The notes under the pieces are model-generated. The model saw only the letters and a list, made by a program, of their open reading frames with translations, was not told where the DNA came from and ran no database searches. DNA of 28,299 nucleotides from Hyalangium minutum. Lineage in GTDB: Bacteria > Myxococcota > Myxococcia > Myxococcales > Myxococcaceae. Positions within the stretch are counted from its first letter, which is position 1; the number at the start of each line of letters is the position of its first letter. The translations under genes and the position numbers were made by a program. The stretch covers positions 1 to 28,299 of the forward strand of contig NZ_JMCB01000035.1 of assembly GCF_000737315.1 (NCBI RefSeq), given 5' to 3'. Shown here piece by piece: positions 3,573 to 28,203 of this stretch.

Positions 3573-4027
3573 AGGAAGGACCGGAGCCCTCTTGGGCGTA
3601 GCGGGCGGGAGCAGAGCGGGAGGTGAGGGACGCTGACGGGGAGCCCATGAGCCGCACTCCGGGCCGGCGCACAAGCCCTTCATTGGAAACGATCTTCCAA
3701 TAACGAGGGATTTCGATCCCGTCGATCGCGACGAAGCGCGGGCACGAGTCCCGCGCTCCAACGATCGCCGTCACTTCCGCCGATGGTCATGACGAGTGCG
3801 GCTTGCCGCCCGCAGCAGGGAATGAGGTACTCTCTTGTTCAAGAGCCCAGCGGCAGAGCGGAAGTTGGTGCCACGTACACCCATCGGGCGTCCGGAGGTC
3901 GAGCAAGGGACCAGGAAGAGCCATCGACAGCGATGCTGATCCGACCCGCGCTTGCCTGATCACCCCTATGCACCAAGGATCGCGCACCCCGCGATCGAAA
4001 CGCCGCGCTTCCGGAAGATCGTCTCCA

Positions 4028-4458
4028 CTCTTCTTCAACTACGCCCATGAGCCGCTCGTCGTCATCAACCCGGCCAACGCCGACCGGCTGCAGCACCTGG
4101 TGCGCAACCAGCTCGGCTTCGACCTGATCGGCTCCACCGGCCTGGGGGAGCGCTTCGAGCTGGGCCTCGTGGCCCCGCTCAAGATCGAGCGCGGCGAGTT
4201 CAACGAGCTGCCCACCGGCAACCTGGAGCAGTCGTGGAAGGGCGGCCTGGGTGACCTCCGGCTCGTCCCCAAGGTGTTACTTCTAGAACGCGACACCCTG
4301 CGGCTGGGGCTCGCGGCGCCAATGGTGATGCCCACGGCGGACGCCTCGGAGCTTCAGGGCCAGAAGGGGTTTGGCGTGCAGCCGCGGCTCGCGGCGGACT
4401 ACGCCTTCGAGAGCGGCACCCGGCTGCTGGCCAACCTGGGCCTCAACGTGCGCAGCCG
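4028..4458 (+). pseudogene. Internal fragment of a myxobacterial outer-membrane beta-barrel (OmpA/TraB/AgmC-type barrel)
   Basis: FNYAHEPLVV...GLGERFELGLVAPL...GGLGDLRLVPKVLLL...PRLAADY...LLANLG. No credible start or signal peptide; cut at 4459 by the oriIS-like repeat. Confidence 0.75.
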
Positions 4459-4520
4459 GCGTATAGGCAGGATAGAGGCCATGTTGCTGGTGAGGGCTGG
4501 AGCGGAGGTGCCGAGGAGGA
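4459..4520 (-). mobile_element. Isolated 62-bp copy of an IS91/ISCR-type oriIS end (copy B)
   Basis: 60/62 identical to 7132-7193. On the minus strand it ends ...TATCCTGCCTATACGC, carrying the CCTATAC core of ISCR oriIS. Confidence 0.8.
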
Positions 4521-4529
4521 GCGACACGA

Positions 4530-7025
4530 TCAGCCCTCCTTGCGCACCACCCGGTCCCGCCGCCACTTCACCTTCTTTCCGATGAGCTTCGCCCCGGTCA
4601 CGTCGTTCGTCGTGGTGCTGGCCTTGTAGCACTTGTCGATGGACAGCGTGACGAAGCTGGTGTCCACATCGATCACTTCGCCGACCACATCGACGCCGGG
4701 GTGGAAGAGCGCGTTGGCCATGCGGATCCGGTCCCCCTTCTTGAACTGGACCGCGCGCGGCCAGTCGATCGTCGTTCCCACCAGCTTCTTCGTCTGCGTT
4801 GTGGTTTCGAGGATCATCGTGCCGGTCTGATAGCACGCCTTCGCCTTCAGCTTGATGTGCGTCTCGGTCAGCTCGGTGACCTCGCCGACGATCTCGAAGC
4901 CCTGGTAGGTCGACGGATCCGAGACGCGAATTGTATCTCCCACTTTGGACTCGGGAGCGGTCTTGGAGACCTTCTTGTCCGCGCGGAACGCTTGCTTGAG
5001 CTGCTCCAGCGACTTCTCCTTGTGACTGGACTGCTGGAAGAACTTCTGGGTGTCGCCGATCTTCCCAAAGAGCTTGAGCTTCGCGGTGATGCCCGTGTTG
5101 GGGAAGCGGCTCGCATACCGTGGGTAGGCGAACACGATGAACCAGACCAAGGCGCGCATCTTCTGCTCCTCCTCGTCGACGAGTCCGCCGAGATGAAGGA
5201 GTGACCGTGCCAACTCGGAGAGCTTCGACGTGAGGTACTTCTTCTGCAGCAGCGCCTGCTTGAAACTGTTGTACTCGCTCAGGGTCTCGCTCCCGGCGAT
5301 CCGCTCGATGGTGCGGCTGACGGTGGTGTTCTGGAGCGCGGAGTACCGGAGGAAGCCGGTGTCCCGGTTCTCGATCTGGAAGAACAGCGGGAACCCCTTG
5401 GTGGTTCCGCGGCCCCCGCCATCCAGCGACGCATTGAGCCGGATCAGGTAGGCCATGAGCTCTTGCAGCGAGCGGCCCTGGAACCCACAGAGCTGCTTGA
5501 TCCGCGTCGCCCCTACCGGGTTCTGGAGGTCGTCTTCCGACTGCGTGCGGTCGAAGTAGATCGTCGGCACGCCGAGGTACATCAGGCGCTCCATCGAGCC
5601 GCTGCGCATGCCGATCTGGATCACCGGATAGCGGAGGGAGAGGTTGAGCAGGAAGTTGATCTGAGCCCCCATCGGCTGGCCCTTGAAGGGCTCGCGCTCC
5701 CAGAACCGGATCAAGTTATGGGACGATGGGCTCTTGCGGTACGAGAGCGTCAACATCTCGTCGCTCTTCTTCTCAGAGATTCCGTAGTGGTGCAGGAGGT
5801 AGCTCTGGATCCGCGTCCGATCCTCCGACGAGAGGTTCTCGTAGAGCGAGATGCCGAGGACCATCGCCGTGTGCTCGAGCGCGTTCTGGCCCATGGAGAG
5901 GTCCTCGCCCCTCGCCATCGCTCTCGAGGAGATCGGGGCCGACAGCTTCCCGAGCTCTTCCTTGAGCTCGTCGCCGATGGGGATGAACCGGATCGGCGCG
6001 TTCAGCTCGGCCGCCATGTCGGAGACGATCTGCCTGACCTGCTTGTAGAGCGTGAAGTTGGTATGGTGCTGCGGCTTGCCGGGGCTCGTTCTCTCCTGCC
6101 CGAGGCCGAAGTCCGCGAGGATGGCGCGCTCCTCGTCGGGCTTCGCGCCGCGGATCCAGAACAGCACCAGGACGGGCGTGGCCTCTCGGACTCCGCCCTT
6201 GCGCAACTCCAGATCCTCGACGAAGGTCGAGATGAACTTTTCGTTCGCCTGGGAAAACTTGCTGGTGGCGTTGAGGATCTCCAGCCGGAGCGCGCTCACC
6301 ACTGGCGCGAAGCCTTTCTTGTCCACGCAGCTCAGGACGTAGTTCGTCGAGGCATCGATGTAAGCGAAGGCGATCTGCCCCTTGCCACCGTGGAACGCCT
6401 TCATGACGGCATCCGAGAACTCCTGACGGCGGCGGGCGACGAGCCCCACCTCCATGACGTCAAGAGCCGCCTCCTTGTAGAAGGAGTGTACGCGGAGGAA
6501 GCCACGCAACCGCTCGGCGTTCGACCACGACACCCTGCCCGACAGTGAGATGCCGAGAACCGCCGCCGCATGCTCGAGCGAGCGCTCATCCACTTTGAGG
6601 GCCAGCGCCGCTTCCTTCTCCTCGAGCCAGCCGCCGATGGGGTTCTCCTTCGTGGTGAGGAAGCGCGACAGGAGGCGGGGGTTGCTGTTGAAGAAGTCCT
6701 TGTCCGCGATCACCAGGAGGGAGCCTGGCTCCTCATGGAACTCCACGAGATCGACGTCCTTCTCGAAGCGGCAGCGGACGATGCAGAGTTCGCTGTCGAG
6801 CAGGCCGAATGACGAGAAGTAGCCCAGCCGCCCATCGACCTTCCGCTTGTAGTCGACGGCCTTCTTGAGCAAGGGGTCGATTCCGTCGTCGTACAGCCCC
6901 TCGTCCACCCACAGGAGCCCCCTCATCGGATCGCCCAGCTTGGCCCGGCTCAGCAGCAGCGCGTACACGAGCCCGTAGGCGTCTCCCTCTTGGTAGATGT
7001 GGTGGTTGACGAAAGTGGTCCCCAT
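4530..7025 (-). CDS. Large hypothetical protein (831 aa): putative GT-B/GT9-like glycosyltransferase with two C-terminal SH3/KOW-like barrels
   Basis: Long open frame with coding-like codon bias; ATG at 7025 with AAGGA upstream (the ORF track extends to 7073). EGDAYGLVYALLL and QIGMRSGSMERLMYLGVPTIYF resemble the GT9 motifs lGD..l..pal and IGnDSGpmHlAaalgvPtv.lF. The gene itself is confident; the function is tentative. Confidence 0.6.
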   Translation of the reverse strand: MGTTFVNHHIYQEGDAYGLVYALLLSRAKLGDPMRGLLWVDEGLYDDGIDPLLKKAVDYKRKVDGRLGYFSSFGLLDSELCIVRCRFEKDVDLVEFHEEPGSLLVIADKDFFNSNPRLLSRFLTTKENPIGGWLEEKEAALALKVDERSLEHAAAVLGISLSGRVSWSNAERLRGFLRVHSFYKEAALDVMEVGLVARRRQEFSDAVMKAFHGGKGQIAFAYIDASTNYVLSCVDKKGFAPVVSALRLEILNATSKFSQANEKFISTFVEDLELRKGGVREATPVLVLFWIRGAKPDEERAILADFGLGQERTSPGKPQHHTNFTLYKQVRQIVSDMAAELNAPIRFIPIGDELKEELGKLSAPISSRAMARGEDLSMGQNALEHTAMVLGISLYENLSSEDRTRIQSYLLHHYGISEKKSDEMLTLSYRKSPSSHNLIRFWEREPFKGQPMGAQINFLLNLSLRYPVIQIGMRSGSMERLMYLGVPTIYFDRTQSEDDLQNPVGATRIKQLCGFQGRSLQELMAYLIRLNASLDGGGRGTTKGFPLFFQIENRDTGFLRYSALQNTTVSRTIERIAGSETLSEYNSFKQALLQKKYLTSKLSELARSLLHLGGLVDEEEQKMRALVWFIVFAYPRYASRFPNTGITAKLKLFGKIGDTQKFFQQSSHKEKSLEQLKQAFRADKKVSKTAPESKVGDTIRVSDPSTYQGFEIVGEVTELTETHIKLKAKACYQTGTMILETTTQTKKLVGTTIDWPRAVQFKKGDRIRMANALFHPGVDVVGEVIDVDTSFVTLSIDKCYKASTTTNDVTGAKLIGKKVKWRRDRVVRKEG

Positions 7026-7131
7026 GGCCGACCGTCCTTTGCCTTGTAGCGGCCGGAGAGTGTCGGTGATCATGTCGCACAGAGCGAGAAATCGTGCCCC
7101 GGCCCATGGGCAGCGCTACGGAATCAGCCGC

Positions 7132-7638
7132 GCGTATAGGCAGGATAGAGGCCATGTTGCGGGTGAGGACTGGAGCGGAGGTGCCGAGGAGGACCGCTGA
7201 CAGGTGCCGCCCGAGCAGTGCGCCCGGTCGGTGGACAGGCCGCGCAGCCCCTTGAGGTACACGCCTGCCCAGGCCGCCCTCCCATGGGGTGCGCGGTAGG
7301 GGACTGGGCCTTTTGGCTCTGGGGAGGCGTGAGCCTTAACACCCCGCGGCCTGGATTGATTCTTGCGCCGGGGCCAGGCTCACACCTGCCGTGGGCAAGC
7401 CCAGGTGCTCCCGTATCGCTCGCACTCCCCTGCCTGCCTTCACATACGCCAAGACCCTTAAGCCTGCCTCCACACCTGACGCAGGCGAACACGTCGAAGT
7501 CGAACGTCCTCTTCAGCAACTCTGCCCAATCCACTCGCGGCGTCCTCTGCTTCATCCGCTCCTTCCTGGCCGCTGCCTCACTCCCCGCTCTCGCCTCCTC
7601 CGCTTGGGGGAACAGAAATGGCCGCAGTTTGGCGCGAA
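7132..7638 (-). mobile_element. 5'-truncated IS91/ISCR-like (Y2 HUH) element: frameshifted transposase C-terminus, GC-rich downstream region and oriIS end (copy A)
   Basis: AKLRPFLFPQ...RTPRVDWAELLKRTFDFDVFACVRCGGR is the DWA..LKR.F..D...C..CGG C-terminal motif of IS91/ISCR transposases. The frame shifts after CGGR. The end reads CCTATACGC at 7132. Confidence 0.85.
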
Positions 7639-7867
7639 CGGAGATCACCGATCCCTCCTATACCAGCGGCGGCAGCTGCCCAGCGGGGCGCAGCTGCCGC
7701 TACAGCGACAGCGCCTTCTTCAGTGCCAGCACCAGCGTCAGCCCGCTGGTGGCGATGACTCGTGCGGCGCGGGCTCCAACCCGTGGAACTTCGCCTTCGC
7801 CCCGTTGGGCTCCATCCAGAACGAGTTGGGGATTGTCCCCTACTGCCAGGGTTTCGTGGGCTGCTGA
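7639..7867 (+). pseudogene. 3' remnant of a Cys-containing, probably secreted protein, frameshifted
   Basis: Two frames join as ...TDPSYTSGGSCPAGRSCRYSDSAFFSAST... / ...DDSCGAGSNPWNFAFAPLGSIQNELGIVPYCQGFVGC*. The 5' part is replaced by the IS91-like remnant. Confidence 0.35.
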
Positions 7868-8849: not shown

Positions 8850-9114
8850 GGGCTGAGTGGATGATCACTGCGCTGCACATGTCAATGCAGGCGGATGGAG
8901 CCATTGGATTGCAGCAACGGGAGCAGATGGAGCGCTTCGGAGATCGGGCTGTGCACTGGGCCGGTGGAGCATCACCCTCCGAAGATGTACCTGCCCCTGC
9001 GGACGTGTCGTGTTCTCGTTGCCATTGGGGAATTGGAGGATCCACTGCCGGTAGGGCTTCGTGCTACGAGAGCCGTGGGGGGCGTGGCCGGTTCGCCCCT
9101 GGACTCGCAAGGCC

Positions 9115-10017
9115 ATGCGCACGGACATCCTTCCCGAGGAGCTCCTCGAGACGGTTCTCGGTTCGATGACGGCAGCCGCCGCGGAGCGGCTGCGTGCCGA
9201 GCCCGGCCTGCCTCAGGTACTCTCCCGGATATTCGCGGAGGCGGCCTCGCTTCGGAGCGTGGCGCCAGAGCCACTCGTGTTCGCGCGTCACTTGGGCGCG
9301 TGGCTCGCCGAGGCGGACGACCCCGCTCGCGTCCTGGAGCGCCTGCATGCGCGAGACCTGGCGCTCGCGCTCGCCTGTGCCCTGGAGACGCCCGGAGCCA
9401 CGGAGCTGCTCGAGGAGGAGGTCCTGGGCAGGCTGCGCGTGCCGCTCTCCCGCCTCCATCCCTCGCCCGCGTTCGTGGACGAGGTGCTCCAGACGCTCCG
9501 GGCGAACCTGCTCATGCCCCGGGCGGGAGGGCCGCCCCGGCTCATCGGCTATGCGGGCGTGGGCTCATTGTTCCACTGGGTGAACAGCGCGGGCGTGCGG
9601 CTCGCGCTGCGGATGCGCAAGGCGCATGGCCAGGAGGCCCAGGTGGATGCCGAGGTGCTGGCCGCGCATCCCGCCCAGGGAGGGCTGGAGCTGGGGCTGG
9701 TCCGCGAGGAGGCCCGCGCGCATGTGCGTGCCGCTTTCGTGCAGGCGGTGGCGTCACTCGATGACGAGGACCGGGAGCTCTTGCGCCTGCACTTCGTGGA
9801 GCGGCTTTCCCTGGAGCGGATGGGGACGCTGTACGGTCTGCACAAGTCGACCCTGTCCCGGCGGTTGTCCGGGGTACAGGCGCTGCTGGAAAAGCGCACG
9901 CGCCGGTGCCTGTCGGAGCGGCTGGCGCTCTCCTCGGAGGAATTGGACAGCGTGATGCGCGCTATCCACGGTCGCCTCGACCTGAGCCTGTCCGGGCTCC
10001 TGGCGGCGAAGGGATGA
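9115..10017 (+). CDS. ECF-like sigma-70 factor, Myxococcales family (TIGR03001-like)
   Basis: DLALALACAL...EVLQTLRANLL...YAGVGSLFHWV region 2; RELLRLHFVERLSLERMGTLYGLHKSTLSRRL region 4. ATGA overlap with the kinase gene. Confidence 0.85.
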   Translation: MRTDILPEELLETVLGSMTAAAAERLRAEPGLPQVLSRIFAEAASLRSVAPEPLVFARHLGAWLAEADDPARVLERLHARDLALALACALETPGATELLEEEVLGRLRVPLSRLHPSPAFVDEVLQTLRANLLMPRAGGPPRLIGYAGVGSLFHWVNSAGVRLALRMRKAHGQEAQVDAEVLAAHPAQGGLELGLVREEARAHVRAAFVQAVASLDDEDRELLRLHFVERLSLERMGTLYGLHKSTLSRRLSGVQALLEKRTRRCLSERLALSSEELDSVMRAIHGRLDLSLSGLLAAKG

Positions 10018-12677
10018 GCTGCCCAGACGAGAACGACCTCGCCCGCTACGTGAATGGCTTGCTGTCGGCCGAGCGTGAGCAGGCGGTGCGCTCCCATGTC
10101 ACCGGCTGTGGCGAGTGCCGGAGCGTGCTCGCCGCGCTGAGCGCTCTGGAGGAGCCGCCCCTCGCGCAGGGCGTGGGGCCGCTCGCCACGGGCACGCGGG
10201 TAGGGCGCTATGTGGTGCTGGGCCTGTTGGGCGAGGGCGGCATGGGCCGCGTCCATGTCGCGTACGACCCCGAGCTGGACCGCAAGGTGGCGTTGAAGCT
10301 GCTCAACCCGGAGCGGCTTCGCGGGGACTCGCTGGACCTGGCGCGACAGCGGCTGGAGCGCGAGGCCCGGACCATGGCGCGGCTGTCCCATCCCCATGTC
10401 GCCAGCCTCCATGACGTGGGCGAGTACGAGGGACAGCTGTTCCTGGTGATGGAGTTCGTGGAGGGAGGCACGCTGCGGAAGTGGCTGGCGGAACGTCCCC
10501 GCTCGCGCCGGGAGATCCTGGAGCGCTTCCTCCAGGCCGCGGACGGGCTCGCTGCCTCGCATGCGCTGGGCATCGTCCACCGCGACTTCAAGCCGGACAA
10601 CGTCCTGCTCACGAAGCCTGGCGTCGTCCGCATCACCGACTTCGGCCTGGCCCACGCGACGGCGGCGTCCGGGGAGGGGGCGGTGCTGGATGCCTCGGTG
10701 ACGAGCGACGCCCTCACCGTCACCGGGACCTTGCTGGGCACGCTGGCCTACGGCGCGCCCGAGCAGCTTCGTGGCGAGCGCGGCGATGCCCGCTCGGACC
10801 AGTTCTCCTTCTGCGTCGCGCTCTACGAGGCGCTCAATGGCCAGCGTCCCTTCGAGGGGACAACCCGGGAGGCGCTGCTGGAGGCGATGGCGCGTCAGGC
10901 CGTGCGGCCCGAACGGCCCGGGGTTCCGGTGTGGCTGCGGTCCGTGGTCCGCCGGGGGCTCTCCGCGGACCCGGCGAAGCGCTTCTCCTCCATGGGCGAG
11001 CTGCGCGCACGGCTCGCCCGGGACCCTGTCTCCCGATGGCGCAACGGGAGCCTGGCGGCGCTGGCGGTGGTCCTGGCCGTCGCGGTGCTGGGCGTACTTG
11101 CCCGGAGGGAGCCGCGCGAGCTGTGTCAGGGCAGCGAGCGGCACTTCGCGGGAGTCTGGGACGAGGCGGCCCGCGAGGCCCTCCACCGGGCGTTCCTGGC
11201 CACGGGCTCGCCAGACGCGGAAGCCTCCTTCGCGGCGGTGGCGGCGGCGCTGGAGCGCTGGAAGGAGGACTGGACGCGCGCGCACCAGGAGGCCTGCGAG
11301 GCCACGCGTGTCTGGGGGGAGCAGTCGGACCAGGTGCTGGGCCTGCGCATGGCGTGTCTCGATGAACGGCTGGGCGAGGTGAATCGCCTGGTGGCAGTGC
11401 TCCAGGGCGCGGACGCCCGCACGGTGGAGCGTGGCTTCGGCCTGGGGGCGTCCCTGACAAGCCTGCGGCGCTGCTCCGACGTGAGGACGTTGCAGGAGGC
11501 GGTGGCGCTACCCGAGGACCCGGTGGCCTTGGCGGAGGTGGCGGTCATCCGGGGGGAACTGGCGCGGGCGAACGCGGAGTTGCTCGCGGGGCGTACCCCG
11601 GAGGCCTTGAAGGGGGTGCTGGCCGCGCGGGAGCGCGCTGTGCGCACGCACTACCGCCCCTTGGAGGCGGAGGCCCACCTGCTGTGCTCGACGATTCAGT
11701 CGGATGCGAGCATGTTCGAAGCCGCCCGGGACTCCGCGGCACAGGCGGCCCTCGCGGCGGAAGCCGGGCGGCACCATGGCGTGCTGGCGCGGGCGCTCTA
11801 TGGCATGGCCTGGGTAACTGTGCATGGCCTGGGGCAGACGCGGGAGGCGTGGGCCCACCTCCAACGCGCCCAGGCCGTAGCGGAGCCGCTGCGAGACCCC
11901 GAGTTCGACGCGCTGCTGGACTATGTCCGCGCCGAGCTGCTCGAACAGGAGGGCCGCTTCGCCGAGGCGGAGCCCCTCCTGCGCGAGGCGCTCGACCGTG
12001 TCATCGCGAAGGGCGCGTCGCACGCCGCCACCCGCGCCGAGCTCACCGGGCGCCTGGGCCTGCTGGCCCGTCAGCAAGGACGGCTCCTCGAGGCGAAGCG
12101 ATGGCAGGAGGAGGCGGTTCGACTCCATGAAGAACTCCATGGCCCCGAGCATCGCGACACCGCGCGGGCGCTGGCGAACCTGGGGGGCACGCTGGGCTAC
12201 ACGGGAGAGTTTGCGCGCGCGGAGGCCGTCATCCAGCGGGCGCTCGTCATCCTCCAGCGCGTCCTGGGAGAGGAGCATCTGGCGGTGGTACGCACCCTGT
12301 CCAACCTGTCCTTCGTCTACTTCGAGTGGGGACATGGCCCCCAGGCGCGTGAGGCCGCGGAACGGGGCTTCGCGCTGGCGCACAAGAGCGTGGCCCCGGA
12401 TGCCGCAGCCTCTATGGTGACGCGGGCCTCGACCTGCGACGACTACAGCGACAGGCCGCTGAAAGATCCCTACACGGAGGTCTATTCCTTCGCCGTCCGC
12501 GGGGACGAACTCTTCACTCAGAGAGAGGAGGACGACCCGAAGGTCACCCTGCGCTGGAAGCGGGTGAGCGACCTGTGCGAGGCGTCCACCTCGTTCAAGT
12601 GCCGGGGACGAGGGTCGTGCTCCTGTGTCACCACGAAGAACAAGCCCCTGACGGGCCAGCAGAACTGCACCCTCTGA
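10014..12677 (+). CDS. Membrane Ser/Thr protein kinase (N-terminal zinc-finger-like motif, Pkinase, TM, TPR repeats) with a foreign C-terminal ~85 aa
   Basis: HVTGCGEC motif; LGEGGMGRV, VALK, HRDFKPDNVL, DFG, APE; TM near aa 345-365; TPRs. After about 12420 the sequence changes to an unrelated Cys-rich tail. Confidence 0.9.
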   Translation: MSCPDENDLARYVNGLLSAEREQAVRSHVTGCGECRSVLAALSALEEPPLAQGVGPLATGTRVGRYVVLGLLGEGGMGRVHVAYDPELDRKVALKLLNPERLRGDSLDLARQRLEREARTMARLSHPHVASLHDVGEYEGQLFLVMEFVEGGTLRKWLAERPRSRREILERFLQAADGLAASHALGIVHRDFKPDNVLLTKPGVVRITDFGLAHATAASGEGAVLDASVTSDALTVTGTLLGTLAYGAPEQLRGERGDARSDQFSFCVALYEALNGQRPFEGTTREALLEAMARQAVRPERPGVPVWLRSVVRRGLSADPAKRFSSMGELRARLARDPVSRWRNGSLAALAVVLAVAVLGVLARREPRELCQGSERHFAGVWDEAAREALHRAFLATGSPDAEASFAAVAAALERWKEDWTRAHQEACEATRVWGEQSDQVLGLRMACLDERLGEVNRLVAVLQGADARTVERGFGLGASLTSLRRCSDVRTLQEAVALPEDPVALAEVAVIRGELARANAELLAGRTPEALKGVLAARERAVRTHYRPLEAEAHLLCSTIQSDASMFEAARDSAAQAALAAEAGRHHGVLARALYGMAWVTVHGLGQTREAWAHLQRAQAVAEPLRDPEFDALLDYVRAELLEQEGRFAEAEPLLREALDRVIAKGASHAATRAELTGRLGLLARQQGRLLEAKRWQEEAVRLHEELHGPEHRDTARALANLGGTLGYTGEFARAEAVIQRALVILQRVLGEEHLAVVRTLSNLSFVYFEWGHGPQAREAAERGFALAHKSVAPDAAASMVTRASTCDDYSDRPLKDPYTEVYSFAVRGDELFTQREEDDPKVTLRWKRVSDLCEASTSFKCRGRGSCSCVTTKNKPLTGQQNCTL

Positions 12678-12772: not shown

Positions 12773-13444
12773 CTAGCGGAAGAGTTCCCACAGCTGGATG
12801 GCTGTTGCGCGCGCTCGCAGCGTACCGTAGCGATCACCGGCCCAGCCTATCTCGGCCGAGACGTAGAAGTTTTTGGCATAGGAGCGCAACGCATACTGGC
12901 CCCCGCTCAAGGGGATAATATAGAAGCGCTCCCATGCCGCTACCTCCGTGGCGCGGGCCCTCAGCGTGCCGAAGGTGTCTCCGCCCCAGCCGATCTCGGC
13001 GGAAACATAGCGGCCATTGGCCAGAGACTTCAGTGCATACGTGCCGGCGAAGTAACAGAGCTGATACCTTTCCCAAAGGTCCGCCCGGTAAGCCCGGGCT
13101 CTGAGCGTGCCGTACTGAGTGCCGCCCCAGCCCACTTCCGCGGAAACGTAACGGCCGTTCGCCACCGAGGTGATCGTGGTCCATTTGGGATTGCAGACGA
13201 TCGTGGGGGGCACTGCGGCGTCAAGTGTGGCCGCCTGTGCAGCCAGCTCGTCCGCGAGCTCCAGCAGAGGAACTGGCTCAGCTTGAACCTCGGCGAAGGC
13301 CCCCGAAACCTCCTGCTCCTCGAGCGCTGTTGATGTCTGCGCGGTATCCGCGCTCACAGCACCATCCGACTCAGGACCGCATGCCTGAATTCCAAACATC
13401 AGTCCCGCAGTGACAAGAAGACGCCGCAGAAAGATCTGGCTCAT
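12773..13444 (-). CDS. Fascin-like beta-trefoil lipoprotein
   Basis: Lipobox FGIQAC; three repeats of NGRYVSAE.GW.G..YGTLRARA...WE.F. ATG at 13444 is preferred over the GTG/TTG extension to 13690. Confidence 0.85.
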   Translation of the reverse strand: MSQIFLRRLLVTAGLMFGIQACGPESDGAVSADTAQTSTALEEQEVSGAFAEVQAEPVPLLELADELAAQAATLDAAVPPTIVCNPKWTTITSVANGRYVSAEVGWGGTQYGTLRARAYRADLWERYQLCYFAGTYALKSLANGRYVSAEIGWGGDTFGTLRARATEVAAWERFYIIPLSGGQYALRSYAKNFYVSAEIGWAGDRYGTLRARATAIQLWELFR

Positions 13445-13756
13445 ATCGTCTGTTACCCCTGGCAAGCATTGGACAACCGAGTACTGCCTTGACGCTGATG
13501 GGCGGCAGCCAGTACACGCATTCGCTGTTGTTGAGCCAAGAATTGCCACGCACTGTCCAATGAGTACCCCAACCCCGGTGCGGCCACTCTGTTGCTTGTT
13601 TTGTGTTCTCAGCCGAAGAACCGCACCGTAGACAACGCGATTCGGGACGTGTGAGTGGATGCTAGGCATTTCTCTCATCCCCGTGAGCAAGTCCTAGCCA
13701 CTGCGTGACTCCATCAAGGCACGGCAGGGCCAAAAGCTTTCACACAGAGATGCCCC

Positions 13757-18001: not shown

Positions 18002-18773
18002 TTAGCTGGCACCACTTCCCGTAATGACCACGGGCACTGTCTTCAAGATCAGCCGCAGGTCTGTCAGCAGGGTCCAATTGTCGATGTACTGCATGTCCAA
18101 GTACATCCACTCGTCGAAGGAGATCTGGTTGCGGCCGGAGACCTGCCAGATGCAGGTGAGACCTGGGCGCACTGACAGACGCCGGCGCTGCCATGCAGCG
18201 TATTTTTCCACCTCCTTCGGAAGCGGCGGGCGCGGGCCTACCACGCTCATCTCACCGCGCAGTACATTGATCAGCTGCGGCAGCTCGTCGATGGAGTACT
18301 TGCGGATGAAGCGGCCGATCCGAGTGATTCTCGGGTCGTTCTTGATCTTGAACACGGGGCCGGTCTGCTCGCTGAGCGCCTCGAGCTTGGCGCGCAGCTC
18401 CTCGGCGTTCACCACGCCAGATAGCCCGCGACGTGGCGGCGGCCTCGCTTCCGCAGCGCCACGCCAGTCAGCCGGCCCATGGCGCCCACACCGAGGATGA
18501 GCGCCTCGTCTTCTCGAGGGGCCTCGCGCACCGCCAGCCAGCGGAACACCCTCTGCCGTAAGGCCCCCCACTCCAGGCTGCCCACGGAAGACTGTGGCCC
18601 AGCAGCACCGTGGAACCCAGCTGCGTTCCCATTACCAGGAGCAGGTCCACGAACAGGTTCAGCTTGGCGACAAAGCCACGAGCTGGCCGACCGTTCTCCG
18701 CCAGGGGCAAAGGTATGGGAGGAGGCTCCGGCGGGTAGTCCGGCAGGGGCCGATGTGCAGTGTTGGTATGCAT
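18002..18773 (-). pseudogene. Polyprenyl-phosphate hexose-1-phosphate transferase (PHPT, EpsZ/ExoE/WcaJ-like) pseudogene
   Basis: Intact Bac_transf C-terminus (FKIKNDPRITRIGRFIRKYSIDELPQLINVLRGEMSVVGPRP). The N-terminal TM piece (ATG 18773) and the ALILGVGAMGRL piece are in other frames, with the intervening domains deleted. Confidence 0.85.
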
Positions 18774-23758: not shown

Positions 23759-26041
23759 TTAGGGAGCATAGAGCTCCGCAGAGCTGAAGATGACGCCTCC
23801 CGAGAGGAGCACCTTGCCGGTGGGCAGCAGAGTCAGGCTGTGCGAATAGCGACTCGTTTGCATGGAACTCGTGAGCTCCCAGGTTCCCACTGCAGGATCG
23901 TACAGCTCCGCCGAGGCATGGGCCCCGTTGATGGAGCGGCCTCCGGCGACGAGCACCTTGCCCGAGAGCAGCAGCGTCACGGCGGTCTGGTAGCGGGGGA
24001 CACTCATGGAGCCGGTGGTGACCCAAGTGCCGCTATCCGGGTCGTACACCTCTGTCGCTGCCGAGGTGGTCGATCCGCCAAGGACGAGCACCTTGCCGGA
24101 GGGCAGCAGCGTGGCAATGTGGTCCTCGCGAGACTGAGTCATGGAGCCGGTGGGCGTCCAGGTACCCGTGTTCGGGTCGTACAACTCCGCCGAGGAATGG
24201 AAGGGCTCTCCGCCAGTCACGAGCACCTTGCCGGAGAACAGAAGCGTCGCGGTATGGTCACTGCGGGCATCGTGCATGGAGTTCGTGGCGGTCCAGGTTC
24301 CCGTAGCCGGGTCATACACCTCCGCGGTTGCTGCGTAGTCGGTCGAGTACCCTCCCACCACCAGCACTTTTCCAGAGGGCAGCAGCGTCGCGGTGTGGCC
24401 ACCACGCGCATGGTTCATGGTGCCGGTCGACGTCCAGGTTCCCGTGGCAGGGTCATACAGCTCCGCCGTTGCCTGATAGGTGTCCGAGTACCCTCCGGTG
24501 ACAAGGACCTTTCCAGATTGCAGGAGCGTCGCTGTGTGACTCACGCGGGGGATGCTCATCGCGCCCGTGGCCATCCATGTGCCAGTTTCCGGATCGTACA
24601 TCTCCGCTGTCTCCAGGAGTGAGCCGGTCCAAAGCCCTCCGCCAGTCACGAGCACCTTGCCAGAGGACAAGGTCGTCGCGGTGTGCCAGTACCGAGCCTG
24701 GGAAGGGGAAGAGGTGGCAGTCCAGGTGCCGGACAGGGCGCAGGAAGCCAGTCCGGTAATGGTAAAGGTGCGGGTGGCGGTCAAACCAACGCCGTTGGTG
24801 ACGGTAGCAGTGACAGGGGCGGTGCCGCCGTCTGGCACGCAGGTGGGCGCTGTCCACGTGACACGGCTTCTGGTGGCCGAGTCCTCAGACTGGCCCAGCG
24901 CGCCCACAGGGGAACTCCAGGCGAAAGAGAGCAGGCTGTTCGTCAGGTCGCTGGCTACCACCTCGAAGACGAGGAGCTGAGAGGGCGTCGCCGTGAGTGC
25001 GGACTGATAGGAGCGCACGATGATGGGAGGCAAGGAGAGGGGGGACGCCGGAGACACGCACAAGGCCAGGGTGGCGGTCGCATGGCCGCCGCGCTCGTCG
25101 GAGACCTCCACCTGCACTTGGCAGTTGTTGCAGGAGTGAGCGGGCAGTGCAGTGGGAGAGAAGCGGGCCGTGGACATATTTGGGTTCTCCCACGTGCCCA
25201 GGCAGGAGGCGCTCCACTGGTAGCGGAGTGCATCTCCGTCACCATCCGAGGCGGAGACGGAGAGTTCCGTCTGCTCGCCTACAGCCAAAGAGGACTGAGA
25301 TGAGGAGAGGTTCGTCACAACGGGGCGGTTGTTGAAGCGCACGTCCAGAATCACGTCGCCTTGCCCGGCAGAGACGTTCACCGTGAAGGACACCGAGGTG
25401 GCAGCTCCGTGCGAGTCGATCACAGTGAGCGCGAGCTGCACTGGACCCAAGGTGGCCGGAGCGTTCCAGGTGGTGCTGGCCTGGGTGGGCGCGGAGAAGA
25501 TGCCTGACGGTGCTGTCCACTCGTACTCCAGGGAGTCGCTCTGGTTGGGATCATGCGCGCTTGCCATCAATGACACACTCTCGCCGGGGGCTACGACCAG
25601 AGGCGAGGCCACCATTGAGTCAATCAGCGGAGCCTCGTTCGTGTAGGGCTCTTCGGCGGCGCTCTCGTGAAGAGTGAGGGTGATGAGTGACATCTCCGAT
25701 GCCCCGATGGTGACACCTGTGGAATGTCCCTCATAGAGCAGAGTGTCTGCTGGCCCGAAGGCCTGGGCCAGGAATGCGCGGCCGGTACCAGCCGGGATGT
25801 TGCCGACGACTCCTCCCCACACCCCATTCGTTTTCACCAGCTCGGTGACGATGGAGGGCATGTCCGCTGCGGAGGAAGTGACGGTCACGCGTGAGATGTC
25901 ATTGGCGGAGAGGGTGTGGCGCGTGGACACGGCCAACTGCACCGAGCCAGTAGCGCGCGCGGACGCAGAGGAACTCTCATGACAGCCGGCGAGCAGTGCC
26001 CACAACAGGAATAGGACATAGAGGGGACGTGATAGAGGCAT
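23759..26041 (-). CDS. Kelch-repeat lipoprotein with N-terminal Ig/PKD-like domains
   Basis: Lipobox LLAGC; repeated NxxP...Y.W beta-sandwich units; seven R..HTATLL.SGKVLV.GG kelch blades. Confidence 0.92.
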   Translation of the reverse strand: MPLSRPLYVLFLLWALLAGCHESSSASARATGSVQLAVSTRHTLSANDISRVTVTSSAADMPSIVTELVKTNGVWGGVVGNIPAGTGRAFLAQAFGPADTLLYEGHSTGVTIGASEMSLITLTLHESAAEEPYTNEAPLIDSMVASPLVVAPGESVSLMASAHDPNQSDSLEYEWTAPSGIFSAPTQASTTWNAPATLGPVQLALTVIDSHGAATSVSFTVNVSAGQGDVILDVRFNNRPVVTNLSSSQSSLAVGEQTELSVSASDGDGDALRYQWSASCLGTWENPNMSTARFSPTALPAHSCNNCQVQVEVSDERGGHATATLALCVSPASPLSLPPIIVRSYQSALTATPSQLLVFEVVASDLTNSLLSFAWSSPVGALGQSEDSATRSRVTWTAPTCVPDGGTAPVTATVTNGVGLTATRTFTITGLASCALSGTWTATSSPSQARYWHTATTLSSGKVLVTGGGLWTGSLLETAEMYDPETGTWMATGAMSIPRVSHTATLLQSGKVLVTGGYSDTYQATAELYDPATGTWTSTGTMNHARGGHTATLLPSGKVLVVGGYSTDYAATAEVYDPATGTWTATNSMHDARSDHTATLLFSGKVLVTGGEPFHSSAELYDPNTGTWTPTGSMTQSREDHIATLLPSGKVLVLGGSTTSAATEVYDPDSGTWVTTGSMSVPRYQTAVTLLLSGKVLVAGGRSINGAHASAELYDPAVGTWELTSSMQTSRYSHSLTLLPTGKVLLSGGVIFSSAELYAP

Positions 26042-26322: not shown

Positions 26323-28203
26323 ATGCCTTCTGCTTTGAAGACAGGGTTGGGAGTGATTGCGAAGCTCGTGATGACTTCAGCGTTGCTGTGTCTAGCGTGC
26401 CGGGAGGAACTCCAGGGATGGAACGAAGATCCGCCCCATGAAGGGCGCACCGCTCAAGCTCTTCAGGCGACGGCCGGTGGGACTTGGGTGGCCACGAAGC
26501 TCATGGTTAATGCTCGCGACTTCCACTCGGGGACGCTGTTGTCTGACGGCAAGGTGCTGGTCATCGGAGGGGTGGGCCCCAGTGGGGAACTCACCCGTGC
26601 GGAGGTGTACGACCCGGACATGGGAGCGTGGAGCCTCACGAACCCGATGATCATGAACCGCGTTTGTCATACGGCGACACTGCTGCCCTTGAGCAAGGTG
26701 CTGGTCGCCGGAGGTGTGGGCCTCAGCGGCGAACTCCCCCGGGCGGAGGTCTATGATCCGGATACGGGAGCGTGGAGCCTCACAGGCCCTCTGAGCACGG
26801 CCCGCTGTGGGCACACGGCGATCCTGCTATCCTCGGGCAAGGTGCTGATTGCCGGAGGCTGGAACTCGAGCGGCGCGCTCGCCAGCGCGGAGTTGTACGA
26901 TCCGGACACGGGAGAGTGGAGCCCCACGGGCTCAATGGCCACGGCCCGCCAATACCTGACGGCAACGTTGTTGCCTTCAAGCAGGGTGCTGGTCGCCGGA
27001 GGTTCCGGCCTCAGCGGCGCGCTCGCCAGCGCGGAGGTGTACGACCCGGGCACGGGACAGTGGAACCCCACGGGCCCGATGGCGACGGCCCGTGCTCGCC
27101 ACACGGCGACATCGTTGCTGGGCGGTAAGGTACTGGTCGCCGGAGGTTCTGGTCCCAGCGGTGAGCTCGCTAACACGGAGGTGTACGACCCGGACAGGGA
27201 AGAGTGGAGCCCCTCGGGCCCGATGGCCACGGCCCGCGCCCGCCACACGGCGACGCCATTGCCCGGCGGCAAGGTGCTGGTCACTGGAGGCCTTGGCCCT
27301 ACCAGCGAGCTCGACGTGGGCGGACTCGCCAGCGCGGAGGTGTACGATCCAGCCACGGGGGAGTGGAGTCTCACAGGCCCTATGGACACGGGCCGTATGC
27401 ATCACACGGCGACGCTGTTGCGCTCAGGCGAGGTGCTGGCCGTAGGGGGCTACAACTGGCCAGATGGCCGCCTCGCCAGCGCGGAAGTGTATAATCCGGC
27501 CGCGCTGGTGGTGACCTCCCCAGCCAACCACTCGACGACTAAGAATCACCGGCCGATCTACTGCGGGACGGCGAAGGCGGAAAGCACCGTCACCCTGTTC
27601 GTGGATGGGCGTGAGGTAGGTACCACGAAGGCCAACACCTCAGGAGAGTGGTGCCACCAGCAGCCTGTGAACCTGGCGGAGGGCATCCACACTGTGAGGG
27701 CCTGGGTCATGGATGTCGGTGGCAGCACCGGAGCGGACTCGAATACCAACATCTTCACGGTAGACATCACGCCTCCGGCCGTTCCGGAGCTGCTCACCCC
27801 TGCCGACGACTCGACGACCAAGGAGAACCGGCCGATCTATGGCGGGACCGCGGAGGCAGGATGTACCGTCACCGTGTTCGTGGATGGGAGTGAGGTAGGC
27901 ACCACGAAGGCCAACGCCTCGAGGGAGTGGAGCCACCAGCAGCCTGTGAACCTGGCGGACGGCAGCCACACTGTGAGGGCACGGGCCACGGATACAGGGG
28001 ACAATACCGGTCTTGACTCGAAGACCCACTCCTTCTTGGTGGATGCCACATCTCCGGAAAAACCCCTGGTGCGTGTGCCTGACGTCTTCAACACCCAGAA
28101 CCCCAGCCTTGCCGGGGTGGCGGAGGCCCGCAGTCTGGTGACGGTATGGCTGGATGGCACGGAGGTGGGAACACTCACGGCGGATGAGGTGGGAAATTGG
28201 AGC
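26323..28203 (+). pseudogene. Kelch plus bacterial Ig-like repeat lipoprotein interrupted by IS66 (missing from the ORF track because the frame stays open to the window end)
   Basis: AGGAG RBS, ATG 26323, MPSALKTGLGVIAKLVMTSALLCLAC lipobox, seven kelch blades, two full Ig repeats (279-bp period from about 27530) and half of a third cut at 28203. Confidence 0.85.
27530..28087 (+). repeat. Two near-identical 279-bp (93-aa) Ig-like domain repeats
   Basis: ACTCGACGAC... recurs at 27530 and 27809; long shared stretches such as CCACCAGCAGCCTGTGAACCTGGCGGA. Confidence 0.85.

What the first reader, a model, noticed from the sequence alone, without database searches (positions are those of the whole stretch)
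4530..7025. 831-aa GT9-like glycosyltransferase with tandem SH3/Tudor-like barrels and no signal peptide: possible toxin, defence or protein-modifying enzyme
Seen: N-terminal EGDAYGLVYALLL, then VLVLFWIRG, RFIPIGD, NLIRFW and QIGMRSGSMERLMYLGVPTIYF in the order expected for a two-Rossmann GT-B/GT9 enzyme. It is far longer than an LPS heptosyltransferase and not in an LPS cluster. Known: GT9-related enzymes include the protein heptosyltransferases TibC/AAH. Inference: a stand-alone mobile GT with substrate-docking barrels could glycosylate proteins or nucleic acids, as an effector or anti-phage factor.
Basis: inference. Interest (0 to 1): 0.7.

Follow-up and report, generated by a model that had tools for sequence, protein, structure and literature searches.

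The report
Orphan GT-B-like enzyme, likely T6SS effector
The gene is real and encodes a rare, unnamed myxobacterial enzyme whose predicted shape weakly resembles two-domain (GT-B) sugar transferases but which is not a GT9 heptosyltransferase by sequence; in four related genomes its relatives sit at the edge of a type VI secretion gene cluster, so it is most likely an injected effector rather than a cell-wall or anti-phage enzyme.

Summary
The ORF exists at 4530-7025 but on the minus strand. It is 831 aa, has GC3 0.91, and all the quoted motifs are present and conserved.

It belongs to a very small, unannotated family. There are no Pfam, NCBIfam, PADLOC or PDB-sequence hits. It was found in 3 of 185,579 species genomes and 8 metagenome loci, and all named hosts are myxobacteria.

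AlphaFold models give two Rossmann-like halves (pLDDT 72.5 for the window protein, 84.3 for a short homologue). In three Foldseek searches the best matches are mostly GT-B enzymes: UDP-GlcNAc 2-epimerase, GT9, EarP, OtsA and TagF. These matches are weak (E >= 8e-4, TM 0.2-0.4).

GT9 membership fails by sequence. PF01075 does not match any of 27 members, and hhalign against a GT9 profile gives probability below 1%.

The C-terminal tandem barrels are real (internal repeat E=1e-11; Tudor/Agenet-like by fold).

New findings:
- In 4 of 13 distinct homologue loci the gene directly flanks one type of T6SS cluster, at either end.
- There is no conserved neighbour that could be an immunity gene.
- Distant relatives are fused to OTU or other cysteine-protease domains.
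- The window copy is an orphan gene cassette beside an IS91/ISCR transposase remnant.

Best reading: a T6SS-associated GT-B-like transferase effector. An anti-phage defence role is not supported.

The parts
4530..7025 (-). Complete CDS, 831 aa (stop TGA at 4530-4532). An upstream in-frame ATG at 7073 would give 847 aa but is not supported by the homologues.
   Evidence: GC3 0.906 and dN/dS 0.44
6636..7025 (-). N-terminal Rossmann-like half, first part (residues 1-130). Strand 1 is followed by the conserved loop N-H-H-x-x-Q-E-G-D-x-Y-G-L. G14 and D15 are nearly invariant across the superfamily, making D15 the candidate catalytic base.
6453..6602 (-). Helical insertion module, copy 1 (residues 142-191; consensus aLEHAAxVLGISL..S..D..RL..YL..HygY). 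It is present only in the window's clade.
6186..6380 (-). Rest of the N-terminal half and the inter-domain helices (residues 216-280; conserved YI-x-x-ST).
5961..6179 (-). C-terminal Rossmann-like half, first part (residues 283-355). It carries LFWIRG (W290, R292), E298, GKPQHHTN (P318, H320) and PIGD (G351, D352), all invariant in the superfamily.
5751..5906 (-). Helical insertion module, copy 2 (residues 374-425), homologous to copy 1 (E=1e-7).
5346..5720 (-). C-terminal Rossmann-like half, second part (residues 436-560). It carries NLIxFW, PMGAQ, Q-x-G-x-R-S-G-x-x-E-x5-G-x-P-T (R474, S475, G476, E479, P487), R508 and FQIENxDTG. This is the putative nucleotide-donor site and the segment with the lowest dN/dS (0.19).
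4956..5345 (-). Helical C-terminal region (residues 561-690) with the conserved GGL..E...WF...YP.Y motif, then a low-confidence charged linker.
4740..4943 (-). SH3/Tudor-like beta-barrel 1 (residues 695-762).
4533..4739 (-). SH3/Tudor-like beta-barrel 2 (residues 763-831), a tandem duplicate of barrel 1. P0003 and P0004 have a single copy. P0005 and P0018 carry a third helical module here instead.
7124..7648 (-). Context: remnant ORF whose residues 24-64 match the C-terminal part of an IS91/ISCR-family transposase. It lies about 50-100 nt upstream of the gene.
   Evidence: NF052416, E=2e-4, fragment only; a similar fragment lies near the Archangium homologue
3803..4585 (+). Context: truncated TraB-like / MetA-pathway-like outer-membrane barrel ORF. 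It converges on the gene and overlaps its 3' end. Its homology stops where the gene cassette begins.
   Evidence: cassette boundaries 4536-7104

Best explanation
The gene encodes a member of a small, so far undescribed enzyme family that is made in the cytoplasm without a signal peptide. Its core is two Rossmann-like alpha/beta halves arranged like a GT-B glycosyltransferase. I infer that the C-terminal half binds an activated nucleotide donor. The conserved R292, the R474-S475-G476 loop and E479 would hold the phosphates and ribose. D15 in the loop after the first strand, together with H320 and D352, would act on the acceptor held in the cleft. The family is most likely a cargo effector of a non-canonical type VI secretion system, one with an IglE-like TssJ and a DUF4280 PAAR-like spike tip. 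The window copy is an orphan effector gene that has moved as a gene-sized cassette into a decayed region next to an IS91/ISCR remnant. The two inserted helical modules and the C-terminal tandem SH3/Tudor-like barrels are clade-specific accessory parts, probably for target or carrier binding. No immunity-like gene travels with the family, and distant relatives are fused to deubiquitinase-type proteases, so the target is more likely eukaryotic (amoebae, fungi or nematodes that meet myxobacteria in soil) than bacterial. Shown: the gene, its conservation, the motifs, the barrels and the T6SS linkage of homologues. Inferred: the GT-B fold (about 0.7), transferase chemistry (about 0.5), secretion (about 0.5 for the family, about 0.4 for this orphan copy) and the eukaryotic target (about 0.3).
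For: Fold:
- The AF2 model of the short homologue P0010 is confident (pLDDT 84.3, pTM 0.85), with alternating beta-alpha elements in both halves.
- Top Foldseek matches in PDB and BFVD are mostly GT-B enzymes: UDP-GlcNAc 2-epimerase at 1.4e-3, GT9 3tov at probability 0.92, EarP, OtsA, TagF, WaaC, and a viral RfaF at probability 0.91 and TM 0.40.
- The loop [RD]-[ST]-G-x-x-[EH]-x7-P after a C-domain strand has the same spacing as D261-G263-H266-P274 of GT9.

Conservation:
- About 20 polar residues are invariant from the myxobacterial family to relatives at 16-24% identity.
- dN/dS is lowest (0.19) in the C-domain.

T6SS linkage:
- In L009 and L014 the gene lies just upstream of DUF4280, a TssA-like gene, X, TssB/C, Y, TssK and TssE.
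- In L006 (Nannocystis bainbridge) and L016 it lies just downstream of TssF, TssL, TssM and TssJ (IglE_N).
- The four clusters are collinear, of one type.
- The linked members are scattered over the family tree, and one (P0006) is sister to the window's clade.

Effector-like traits:
- Neighbourhoods are otherwise not conserved, and no shared neighbour ORF was found.
- The window shares 90.9% nucleotide identity with L007 only across 4536-7104, with unrelated flanks.
- There is a transposase remnant beside the gene.
- Distant relatives carry an OTU domain (Dickeya zeae) or another Cys-protease-like C-terminal domain (read from the sequences).

Precedents:
- GT-B-fold effectors exist in Legionella: SidI is characterised, and SdbA, LegA9, Lpg0770 and Lpg1151 are predicted (PMC11696984).
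- Predicted anti-eukaryotic T6SS effectors, including glycosyltransferase domains, lack adjacent immunity genes (PMC10435454).
- DUF4280 proteins are PAAR-like parts of non-canonical T6SS (PMC5014421).
Against: - The structural matches are weak: no Foldseek hit is better than 8e-4, TM-scores are 0.2-0.4 and rmsd is 10-20 A.
- No sequence method links the family to any glycosyltransferase.
- The model coordinates could not be inspected, so it is not shown that the invariant residues line a cleft.
- Only 4 of 13 distinct loci are next to T6SS genes. The window itself has none, and whether its genome has such a T6SS is unknown.
- No known T6SS delivery marker (PAAR, Rhs, VgrG fusion) was found in the protein.
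- Some homologues sit next to sugar-related genes: RgpF and GT4 in L015, UDPGT in L026, GH3 in L012.
- Secretion, toxicity and donor/acceptor identity are untested.
Confidence: 0.42

Rival explanations
1. A cytoplasmic, non-secreted glycosyltransferase that works for the producer itself. It would modify a polysaccharide, a secondary metabolite or one of the cell's own proteins (EarP-like). A variant of this idea is a T6SS accessory enzyme that modifies parts of the machine. In this reading the barrels dock the enzyme on its endogenous substrate.
For: The fold matches include EarP, OtsA, GT9 and TagF, all of which are housekeeping enzymes. Some homologues neighbour RgpF and GT4 (L015), a UDPGT (L026) or a GH3 glycosidase (L012). 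There is no secretion marker in the protein. GC3 of 0.906 shows long residence in high-GC hosts.
Against: The family is extremely sparse and patchy: 3 of 185,579 species genomes and 29 clusters among 1.84 billion representatives. That is unlike a housekeeping enzyme. No neighbour is conserved outside the T6SS cases. The gene moves as a single-gene cassette. Distant relatives are fused to OTU-type proteases. The gene sits at either end of the T6SS cluster rather than inside it, which is typical of cargo and not of core or accessory genes.
Confidence: 0.25
2. A secreted effector with a GT-B-like scaffold that is not a glycosyltransferase. Instead it would be an NDP-sugar hydrolase or epimerase (NeuC/MnaA-like) or a TagF-like phosphotransferase that depletes or misuses a nucleotide-activated metabolite in the target.
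For: The best Foldseek E-values are to UDP-GlcNAc 2-epimerases and the hydrolysing epimerase NeuC (1.4e-3 and 1.8e-3), and TagF recurs. An invariant His (H320) and Arg residues fit phosphate and His chemistry. The T6SS linkage is the same as for the best explanation.
Against: All the fold matches are equally weak, so ranking within the GT-B superfamily means little. GT9 structures have high Foldseek probabilities (0.90-0.92) in all three searches. There is no sequence similarity to epimerase or TagF families.
Confidence: 0.15
3. An anti-phage defence or nucleic-acid-modifying enzyme. A stand-alone GT would glycosylate DNA or RNA (T4 BGT-like) or phage proteins, with the Tudor/Agenet-like barrels binding nucleic acid.
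For: The gene is sparse, mobile and stand-alone, and lies next to a transposase remnant. In Vitiosangium a TIR-WD40 protein lies 7 kb away among unannotated genes. The barrel fold is shared with KOW, Tudor and Agenet domains.
Against: PADLOC has no hit. There is no match in plasmids. No defence genes recur beside the homologues. The barrels are missing from most of the family, including all T6SS-linked members. No T4 BGT-like structure appears among the viral fold matches.
Confidence: 0.06
4. A true GT9-family (ADP-heptose-dependent) enzyme, for example a protein heptosyltransferase related to TibC/AAH.
For: GT9 structures score among the highest Foldseek probabilities (3tov 0.90-0.92; viral RfaF 0.91). 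The spacing of the [RD]-[ST]-G-x-x-[EH]-x7-P loop is the same, and a GD follows strand 1 as in WaaC.
Against: PF01075 does not match any of 27 members at E<=10. hhalign gives probability 0.07% against WaaC and below 1% against a 123-sequence GT9 alignment. The GT9-invariant K192-x-W-P and Y-G-P motifs are absent. No heptose-biosynthesis or autotransporter genes are nearby.
Confidence: 0.03

Closest known systems
GT9 ADP-heptose:LPS heptosyltransferases (WaaC 2gt1/2h1h, WaaF 1psw, Veillonella GT9 3tov)
   Same: The predicted architecture is the same: two Rossmann-like domains. A G-D follows the first strand. After a C-domain strand there is a [DR]-[ST]-G-x-x-[HE]-x7-P loop with identical spacing. 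GT9 structures score among the highest Foldseek probabilities in all three searches.
   Different: There is no detectable sequence homology. The protein is 2.5 times longer. It has two inserted helical modules, an extra helical C-terminal region and tandem barrels. It has Arg where GT9 has the invariant Asp261, and it lacks the K-x-W-P and Y-G-P motifs. There is no LPS context, and it is restricted to a few myxobacteria.
Legionella GT-B-fold effectors (SidI mannosyltransferase; predicted SdbA, LegA9, Lpg0770, Lpg1151; PMC11696984)
   Same: These are secreted, multi-domain effector proteins whose GT-B-like domain is recognisable mainly by predicted structure. A single acidic residue in the N-terminal half is the proposed catalytic residue, and there is no immunity gene.
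   Different: They use a different secretion system (Dot/Icm T4SS against T6SS here). No sequence or top-50 structural match to them was seen. The host phylum differs.
T6SS cargo effectors encoded at cluster edges or as orphans, including predicted anti-eukaryotic glycosyltransferase domains of RIX effectors (PMC10435454)
   Same: The gene is placed directly beside T6SS core genes or a PAAR-like gene in 4 loci and occurs as an orphan copy elsewhere. The tails are polymorphic, and there is no neighbouring immunity gene, as reported for anti-eukaryotic effectors.
   Different: There is no RIX, MIX, PAAR or Rhs delivery domain. The conserved enzyme domain starts at residue 1. The associated T6SS is a non-canonical type with a DUF4280 spike tip and an IglE-like lipoprotein.
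EarP (GT104), the arginine rhamnosyltransferase of EF-P
   Same: It is a GT-B-fold protein glycosyltransferase, and it recurs among the Foldseek matches (7f2a, 5wxi, 6j7l, 7cox, 5xvr). It also has acidic residues in the loop after strand 1.
   Different: Probabilities are only 0.2-0.35. There is no efp neighbour. The size and motifs differ.
Tandem Tudor/Agenet/KOW-type SH3-like barrels (ADCP1 6ie4, FMRP 4ova, Spt5 KOW 5oik)
   Same: Two consecutive small beta-barrels give Foldseek probabilities of 0.94-0.97. The internal duplication aligns at E=1e-11.
   Different: The E-values are weak (0.025-0.07). There is no Pfam match apart from a sub-threshold MS_channel_2nd hit. No aromatic-cage residues were assessed. 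The barrels occur only in 4 family members.

Membership tests
GT9 (Pfam PF01075 Glyco_transf_9) | Significant match to the family HMM or profile | tested here: not met
   No PF01075 hit at E<=10 for the window protein or for any of 27 superfamily members. hhalign against WaaC gives probability 0.07%. hhalign of A1, A2 and A3 against a 123-sequence GT9 alignment gives probability below 1% (that GT9 alignment had low diversity, Neff 2.7).
GT9 (Pfam PF01075 Glyco_transf_9) | Invariant GT9 residues (K192-x-W194-P195, D261-x-G263, H266, Y279-G-P281 in WaaC numbering) | tested here: not met
   The family has R474-S-G476, E479 and P487 at equivalent spacing, but it has no K-x-W-P and no Y-G-P, and it has Arg instead of Asp261.
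GT9 (Pfam PF01075 Glyco_transf_9) | ADP-heptose donor use; LPS-core or autotransporter acceptor context | not testable with these tools
   No heptose, LPS or autotransporter genes were found in the window or in the homologue loci. The biochemistry is untested.
GT-B fold superfamily | Two Rossmann-like beta/alpha/beta domains facing a cleft, structurally superimposable on known GT-B enzymes | tested here: inconclusive
   The AF2 models show alternating beta-alpha elements in two halves. GT-B proteins are the majority of the top 50 PDB matches and head the BFVD list, but the best E-value is 8e-4, TM is 0.2-0.4 and rmsd is above 10 A. Per-domain superposition could not be run.
GT-B fold superfamily | Nucleotide-binding loop and helix with a ribose-binding acidic residue in the C-domain; catalytic or acceptor residues after strand 1 of the N-domain | tested here: inconclusive
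   Invariant R-S-G-x-x-E follows a C-domain strand, and G-D follows N-domain strand 1. The positions fit GT-B, but their assignment to ligand contacts is inference only.
T6SS cargo effector | Genetic linkage to T6SS core, VgrG or PAAR genes | tested here: met
   Met for the family: L009 and L014 (upstream of the DUF4280 PAAR-like gene and TssA/B/C/K/E) and L006 and L016 (downstream of TssF/L/M/J). Not met for the window copy itself, which has no T6SS gene within 28 kb.
T6SS cargo effector | Adjacent cognate immunity gene (expected for antibacterial effectors) | tested here: not met
   An all-against-all comparison of ORFs of at least 70 aa in 11 loci found no conserved neighbour outside the T6SS genes. 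This is compatible with an anti-eukaryotic effector (PMC10435454) or with no toxicity at all.
T6SS cargo effector | T6SS-dependent secretion and target-cell activity | not testable with these tools
   This needs secretome and competition assays.
Known anti-phage defence systems (PADLOC-DB v2) | Match to a defence-system protein model, or recurrent defence-island context | tested here: not met
   No PADLOC hit at E<=10. No defence genes recur near the homologues.
Tudor/Agenet/SH3-like barrel domains | Small five-stranded barrel fold, here in tandem | tested here: inconclusive
   Foldseek probabilities are 0.94-0.97 to tandem Agenet, Tudor and KOW domains, but E-values are 0.025-0.07 and the linkers have low pLDDT. 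The internal repeat aligns at E=1e-11. The only Pfam hit is sub-threshold, to MS_channel_2nd.

The most novel reading that the evidence does not exclude
The window protein is a member of an unrecognised enzyme superfamily of secreted effectors. In this reading a GT-B-like transferase is delivered by a non-canonical (DUF4280/IglE-type) T6SS in myxobacteria. In other bacteria (Dickeya zeae, uncultured lineages) it is fused to N-terminal zinc ribbons and to OTU-type or other deubiquitinase-like proteases. It would covalently modify a eukaryotic (or prey) target with a sugar or another nucleotide-activated group. That would make it the first GT-B-type T6SS effector family and a marker for anti-eukaryotic weaponry in soil predators.
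Probability: 0.3. Interest if true: 0.75.

Novelty: new variant of a known kind. Interest (0 to 1): 0.55.

Why it matters
If the reading is right, it defines a new effector enzyme family with a clear, testable catalytic signature: G-D; W-x-R-G; P-x-H; I-G-D; R-S-G-x-x-E.

It would link that family to a poorly studied, Francisella-like T6SS type in myxobacteria. It would also add a GT-B-type transferase to the chemistry known for T6SS cargo.

The absence of an immunity gene and the deubiquitinase fusions in distant relatives point to eukaryotic targets. That bears on how soil myxobacteria deal with amoebae, fungi or nematodes.

The family is invisible to current annotation (every member is 'hypothetical protein'), so a Pfam-style model built from these alignments would be useful in itself.

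If the reading is wrong, it is still a conserved orphan enzyme with an unusual internal architecture: the same ~45-aa helical module inserted into both halves of the fold.

Tried and rejected
- Single-sequence and profile searches gave nothing usable. These were Pfam, NCBIfam, PADLOC and PDB sequences.
- tblastn against plasmids found no match.
- The superfamily-profile search of the 5.8-billion-protein set returned only the already known close family, because of the word-index candidate limit.
- hhalign against WaaC and against a GT9 alignment was negative. The GT9 alignment was built from a search seeded with PDB-verified WaaC and 3tov sequences, and it had low diversity. This therefore rules out close GT9 membership, not remote GT-B homology.
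- The whole-chain Foldseek search of the 831-aa model was diluted by insertions. I repeated it with a short homologue, which gave a better model but still weak E-values.
- The sigma-70 promoter and terminator scan around the gene found nothing above shuffled expectation.
- The context look-up for the Dickeya OTU-fusion relative failed. The Archangium distant relative has no T6SS context.
- The metagenome scan added only 8 loci, and none had new T6SS context.
- The small ORF between TssJ and the gene in L016 is low-complexity and not homologous to the Nannocystis N-terminal zinc-ribbon extension.
- The idea of a recent foreign acquisition from a low-GC donor was rejected. The gene's lower overall GC (0.628) comes from amino-acid composition, because GC3 is 0.906.


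Full report
OBSERVATION. The finding's coordinates hold a real gene, but on the minus strand. The plus-strand translation of 4530-7025 is full of stops. The minus strand carries an open frame at 4530-7073.

The 831-aa form starting at ATG 7025 is the correct one. All homologues start there with M-x-x-x-[FVI]-[IV]-N-H-H, and an AAGGA lies 9 nt upstream.

The frame is clearly coding. GC3 is 0.906, like the neighbouring kinase and ATPase genes. dN/dS against an 86%-identical homologue is 0.44 overall and 0.19 in the C-terminal catalytic-looking segment.

WHAT FAMILY IS IT. Sequence libraries give nothing. Pfam shows only a sub-threshold MS_channel_2nd hit on the last barrel, and NCBIfam, PADLOC and PDB sequences have no hit. 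This holds with family profiles too and when 27 members are scanned individually at E<=10.

The family is tiny:
- 17 clusters in the 5.8-billion-protein set.
- 29 hits, 14 of them strong, among 1.84 billion cluster representatives.
- 3 of 185,579 species genomes: Vitiosangium, Corallococcus and Nannocystis.
- 8 loci among 241 million metagenome records.

Every named host of the close family is a myxobacterium, and every member is annotated 'hypothetical protein'.

More distant relatives (16-24% identity) keep the same signature: QSGDxNGV, LFWVRGP, GKPWHHAT or NPHHVMT, PIGD, NLIxFF, and QVGLRSGAIEQGMYLGxPTxYID. They occur in Corallococcus, Archangium, Dickeya zeae and uncultured lineages. The Dickeya protein carries a C-terminal OTU protease domain. 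Others carry N-terminal Cys-rich zinc-ribbon-like segments, and two carry a C-terminal Cys-protease-like domain (read from the sequences).

The superfamily-invariant residues, in 831-aa numbering, are G14, D15, W290, R292, E298, P318, H320, G351, D352, Q470, G472, R474, S475, G476, E479, G485 and R508.

FOLD. AlphaFold2 with the 17-sequence alignment gave pLDDT 72.5 and pTM 0.63 for the window protein. For the 589-aa homologue P0010, which lacks the insertions and barrels, it gave pLDDT 84.3 and pTM 0.85. Both models show two halves of alternating strands and helices, followed by a helical region.

Foldseek against PDB with either model, and against BFVD, puts GT-B-fold proteins at the top:
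- UDP-GlcNAc 2-epimerase (1.4e-3) and NeuC.
- GT9 3tov (probability 0.90-0.92), and WaaC and WaaF.
- EarP, OtsA, TagF and glycogen phosphorylase.
- Viral glycosyltransferases (8e-4), including an RfaF-like heptosyltransferase (probability 0.91, TM 0.40).

These matches are consistent but weak. None is better than 8e-4, TM-scores are 0.2-0.4 and rmsd exceeds 10 A. I therefore treat 'GT-B-like' as probable (about 0.7), not shown.

The conserved residues sit where GT-B enzymes have functional loops. G-D follows the first N-domain strand. W-x-R-G follows the first C-domain strand. R-S-G-x-x-E-x7-P follows a later C-domain strand, with exactly the spacing of D261-x-G263-x-x-H266-x7-P274 in GT9.

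IS IT GT9? No, not by any sequence test. I verified a WaaC sequence against PDB 2gt1 and collected 120 GT9 homologues. I then ran hhalign, which gave probability 0.07% against WaaC alone and below 1% for three family alignments against the GT9 alignment. The GT9-invariant K-x-W-P and Y-G-P motifs are absent. The GT9 alignment had low diversity, so this excludes membership but not a very remote common origin.

ACCESSORY PARTS. Residues 695-831 form two small beta-barrels that are tandem duplicates (31% identity, E=1e-11). They resemble tandem Agenet, tandem Tudor and KOW domains by fold (probability 0.94-0.97, E 0.025-0.07). Only P0001 to P0004 have them, and P0003 and P0004 have one copy.

A second, unexpected feature is a ~45-aa helical module (aLEHAAxVLGISL..S..D..RL..YL..HYGY). 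It is inserted once into each Rossmann-like half of the window protein, at residues 142-191 and 374-425 (E=1e-7 between the copies). It is found two or three times in the seven proteins of this clade. In P0005 and P0018 a third copy replaces the barrels at the C-terminus. It does not occur in any neighbouring ORF.

GENOMIC CONTEXT IN THE WINDOW. Downstream lie a TetR regulator and an NmrA-like reductase. There is also a truncated TraB-like / MetA-pathway-like outer-membrane-barrel ORF (3803-4585, plus strand) that runs into the 3' end of the gene. Upstream lies a remnant ORF (7124-7648, minus strand) matching only the C-terminal ~40 residues of an IS91/ISCR transposase. Beyond it are about 1.4 kb without recognisable genes, then a sigma-like ORF and a zf-HC2/kinase/TPR protein.

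The 86%-identical homologue on contig L007 shares 90.9% nucleotide identity with the window only across 4536-7104. That span is the gene plus about 80 nt upstream, and the flanks are unrelated. The gene therefore behaves as a single-gene cassette.

It is not in an LPS/EPS cluster. The only sugar-related gene in the window is a truncated Bac_transf ORF 11 kb away. No T6SS gene lies in the window.

CONTEXT OF HOMOLOGUES. I examined 13 distinct loci. Nine have unrelated neighbourhoods. Four are directly adjacent to a T6SS cluster:
- In L009 and L014 the gene lies just upstream of a DUF4280 (PAAR-like) gene, an ImpA_N-like gene, an unknown gene, TssB/TssC, a conserved 190-aa protein, TssK and TssE.
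- In Nannocystis bainbridge (L006) and in L016 it lies just downstream of TssF, TssL (DotU), TssM (IcmF) and an IglE_N-type TssJ.

The four clusters are collinear pieces of one cluster type. The family gene is 40% identical between them. In a rough neighbour-joining tree the T6SS-linked members are spread over the family, and one (P0006) is sister to the window's clade.

For a gene in a 10-13 Mb genome, landing within 1-2 kb of a ~25-kb cluster at least twice independently, at both ends, is far from chance (my estimate, not a formal test). An all-against-all ORF comparison found no other conserved neighbour, and therefore no candidate immunity gene.

INTERPRETATION. Several features together fit a secreted effector better than a housekeeping glycosyltransferase or a defence gene:
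- an enzyme-like, strongly conserved core;
- a sparse and patchy distribution;
- cassette-like mobility;
- placement at the edges of T6SS clusters;
- variable C-terminal modules;
- protease fusions in distant relatives.

Published precedents are consistent with this. GT-B-fold effectors are known or predicted in Legionella (PMC11696984). Predicted anti-eukaryotic T6SS effectors, including glycosyltransferase domains, characteristically lack adjacent immunity genes (PMC10435454). DUF4280 proteins are PAAR-like components of non-canonical, Francisella-type T6SS (PMC5014421).

The proposed mechanism is all inference. The C-domain would bind a nucleotide-activated donor through R292, the R474-S475-G476 loop and E479. 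D15, H320 and D352 would act on the acceptor in the cleft. The helical modules and barrels would dock a target or a carrier.

WHAT REMAINS UNCERTAIN. The GT-B assignment rests on weak structural scores and motif geometry. The chemistry could be transfer, hydrolysis, epimerisation or phosphotransfer. Secretion is unproven. The window copy is an orphan, and it is unknown whether its genome has the matching T6SS. A cytoplasmic role remains a serious rival (0.25): some homologues neighbour RgpF and GT4, a UDPGT or a GH3.

VERDICT. Interest is moderate to good (0.55).

Noticed in passing
window 6453-6602 and 5751-5906 (minus strand); P0002-P0005, P0007, P0018: A ~45-aa helical module (aLEHAAxVLGISL..S..D..RL..YL..HYGY) is inserted into both Rossmann-like halves of the same protein. 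In P0005 and P0018 it occurs a third time at the C-terminus, in place of the barrels. It matches no known domain and was not found in any neighbouring ORF.
   Followed up: partly
window 7124-7648 (-); L010 12644-13099 (+): Remnant ORFs match only the C-terminal ~40 residues of IS91/ISCR-family (rolling-circle) transposases. One lies next to the gene in the window and another 2.5 kb from the Archangium violaceum homologue. The two fragments share 75% identity over 24 aa.
   Followed up: partly
window 3803-4585 (+): A truncated ORF resembles the N-terminal barrel part of the myxobacterial outer-membrane-exchange protein TraB (NF033763, 41.6 bits, profile positions 49-203 of 522) and Pfam Phenol_MetA_deg. 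It ends where the gene cassette begins, so the cassette may have disrupted it.
   Followed up: partly
window 4536-7104 vs L007 3677-6245: Homology to the 86%-identical copy (90.9% nucleotide identity) is confined to the gene plus about 80 nt upstream. Both flanks are unrelated, so the gene has relocated as a single-gene unit between related genomes.
   Followed up: yes
L006 9704-10000 (Nannocystis bainbridge); P0015, P0022, P0026, P0027, P0032-P0034: Many relatives carry an N-terminal Cys-rich (zinc-ribbon-like, CxxC...CxxC) extension before the conserved NHH/QxGD start. The window protein lacks it. Its function is unknown.
   Followed up: no
P0034 (Dickeya zeae, WP_220177338.1 cluster); P0022, P0027: Distant relatives are fused to a C-terminal OTU cysteine-protease domain (Pfam E=4.8e-12), or to another Cys-protease-like domain (..SCGQRAAxNA.. 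..GHYIAV..) that Pfam does not recognise. These fusions look like effectors that act on the ubiquitin system.
   Followed up: partly
L007 1682-3637 (+); L026 11989-12978 (-): HEAT-repeat proteins (PF13646) lie directly next to the closest homologue of the window gene and next to a distant Archangium relative. This could be coincidence or a partner or immunity-type protein. They were not compared with each other.
   Followed up: no
L006, L009, L014, L016: These myxobacterial and metagenomic loci carry a T6SS cluster of unusual make-up: a DUF4280 PAAR-like gene, an IglE_N-type TssJ, a TssB-TssC fusion in L014, and a conserved 190-aa protein in the Hcp position without a Pfam match. It is reminiscent of the non-canonical Francisella-type systems.
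   Followed up: partly
window 9061-10017 (+) and 9906-12677 (+): A sigma-70 region-4-like ORF overlaps the start of a 923-aa protein that combines an anti-sigma zf-HC2 motif, a Ser/Thr kinase domain and TPR repeats. GC rises to 0.71-0.74 here, against 0.62-0.65 around the finding.
   Followed up: no
window 12773-13690 (-): A 305-aa ORF has three internal repeats (..NGRYVSAEIGWGG..YGTLRARA..WE.F..) and a weak DUF7910 match. It is probably a secreted beta-trefoil/fascin-like repeat protein.
   Followed up: no
window 26549-27290 and 27518-28026: There are long tandem DNA repeats of period 144/288 (5.2 copies, 76% match) and 279 (1.8 copies). The first probably encodes further Kelch-type repeats, like the 760-aa Kelch/PKD protein at 23759-26041 (-).
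   Followed up: no
window 18002-18571 (-): A Bac_transf (WbaP-like sugar-phosphate transferase) ORF covers only the C-terminal catalytic part (profile positions 61-178). It is possibly truncated or has a mis-set start. It is 11 kb from the finding and not linked to it.
   Followed up: no
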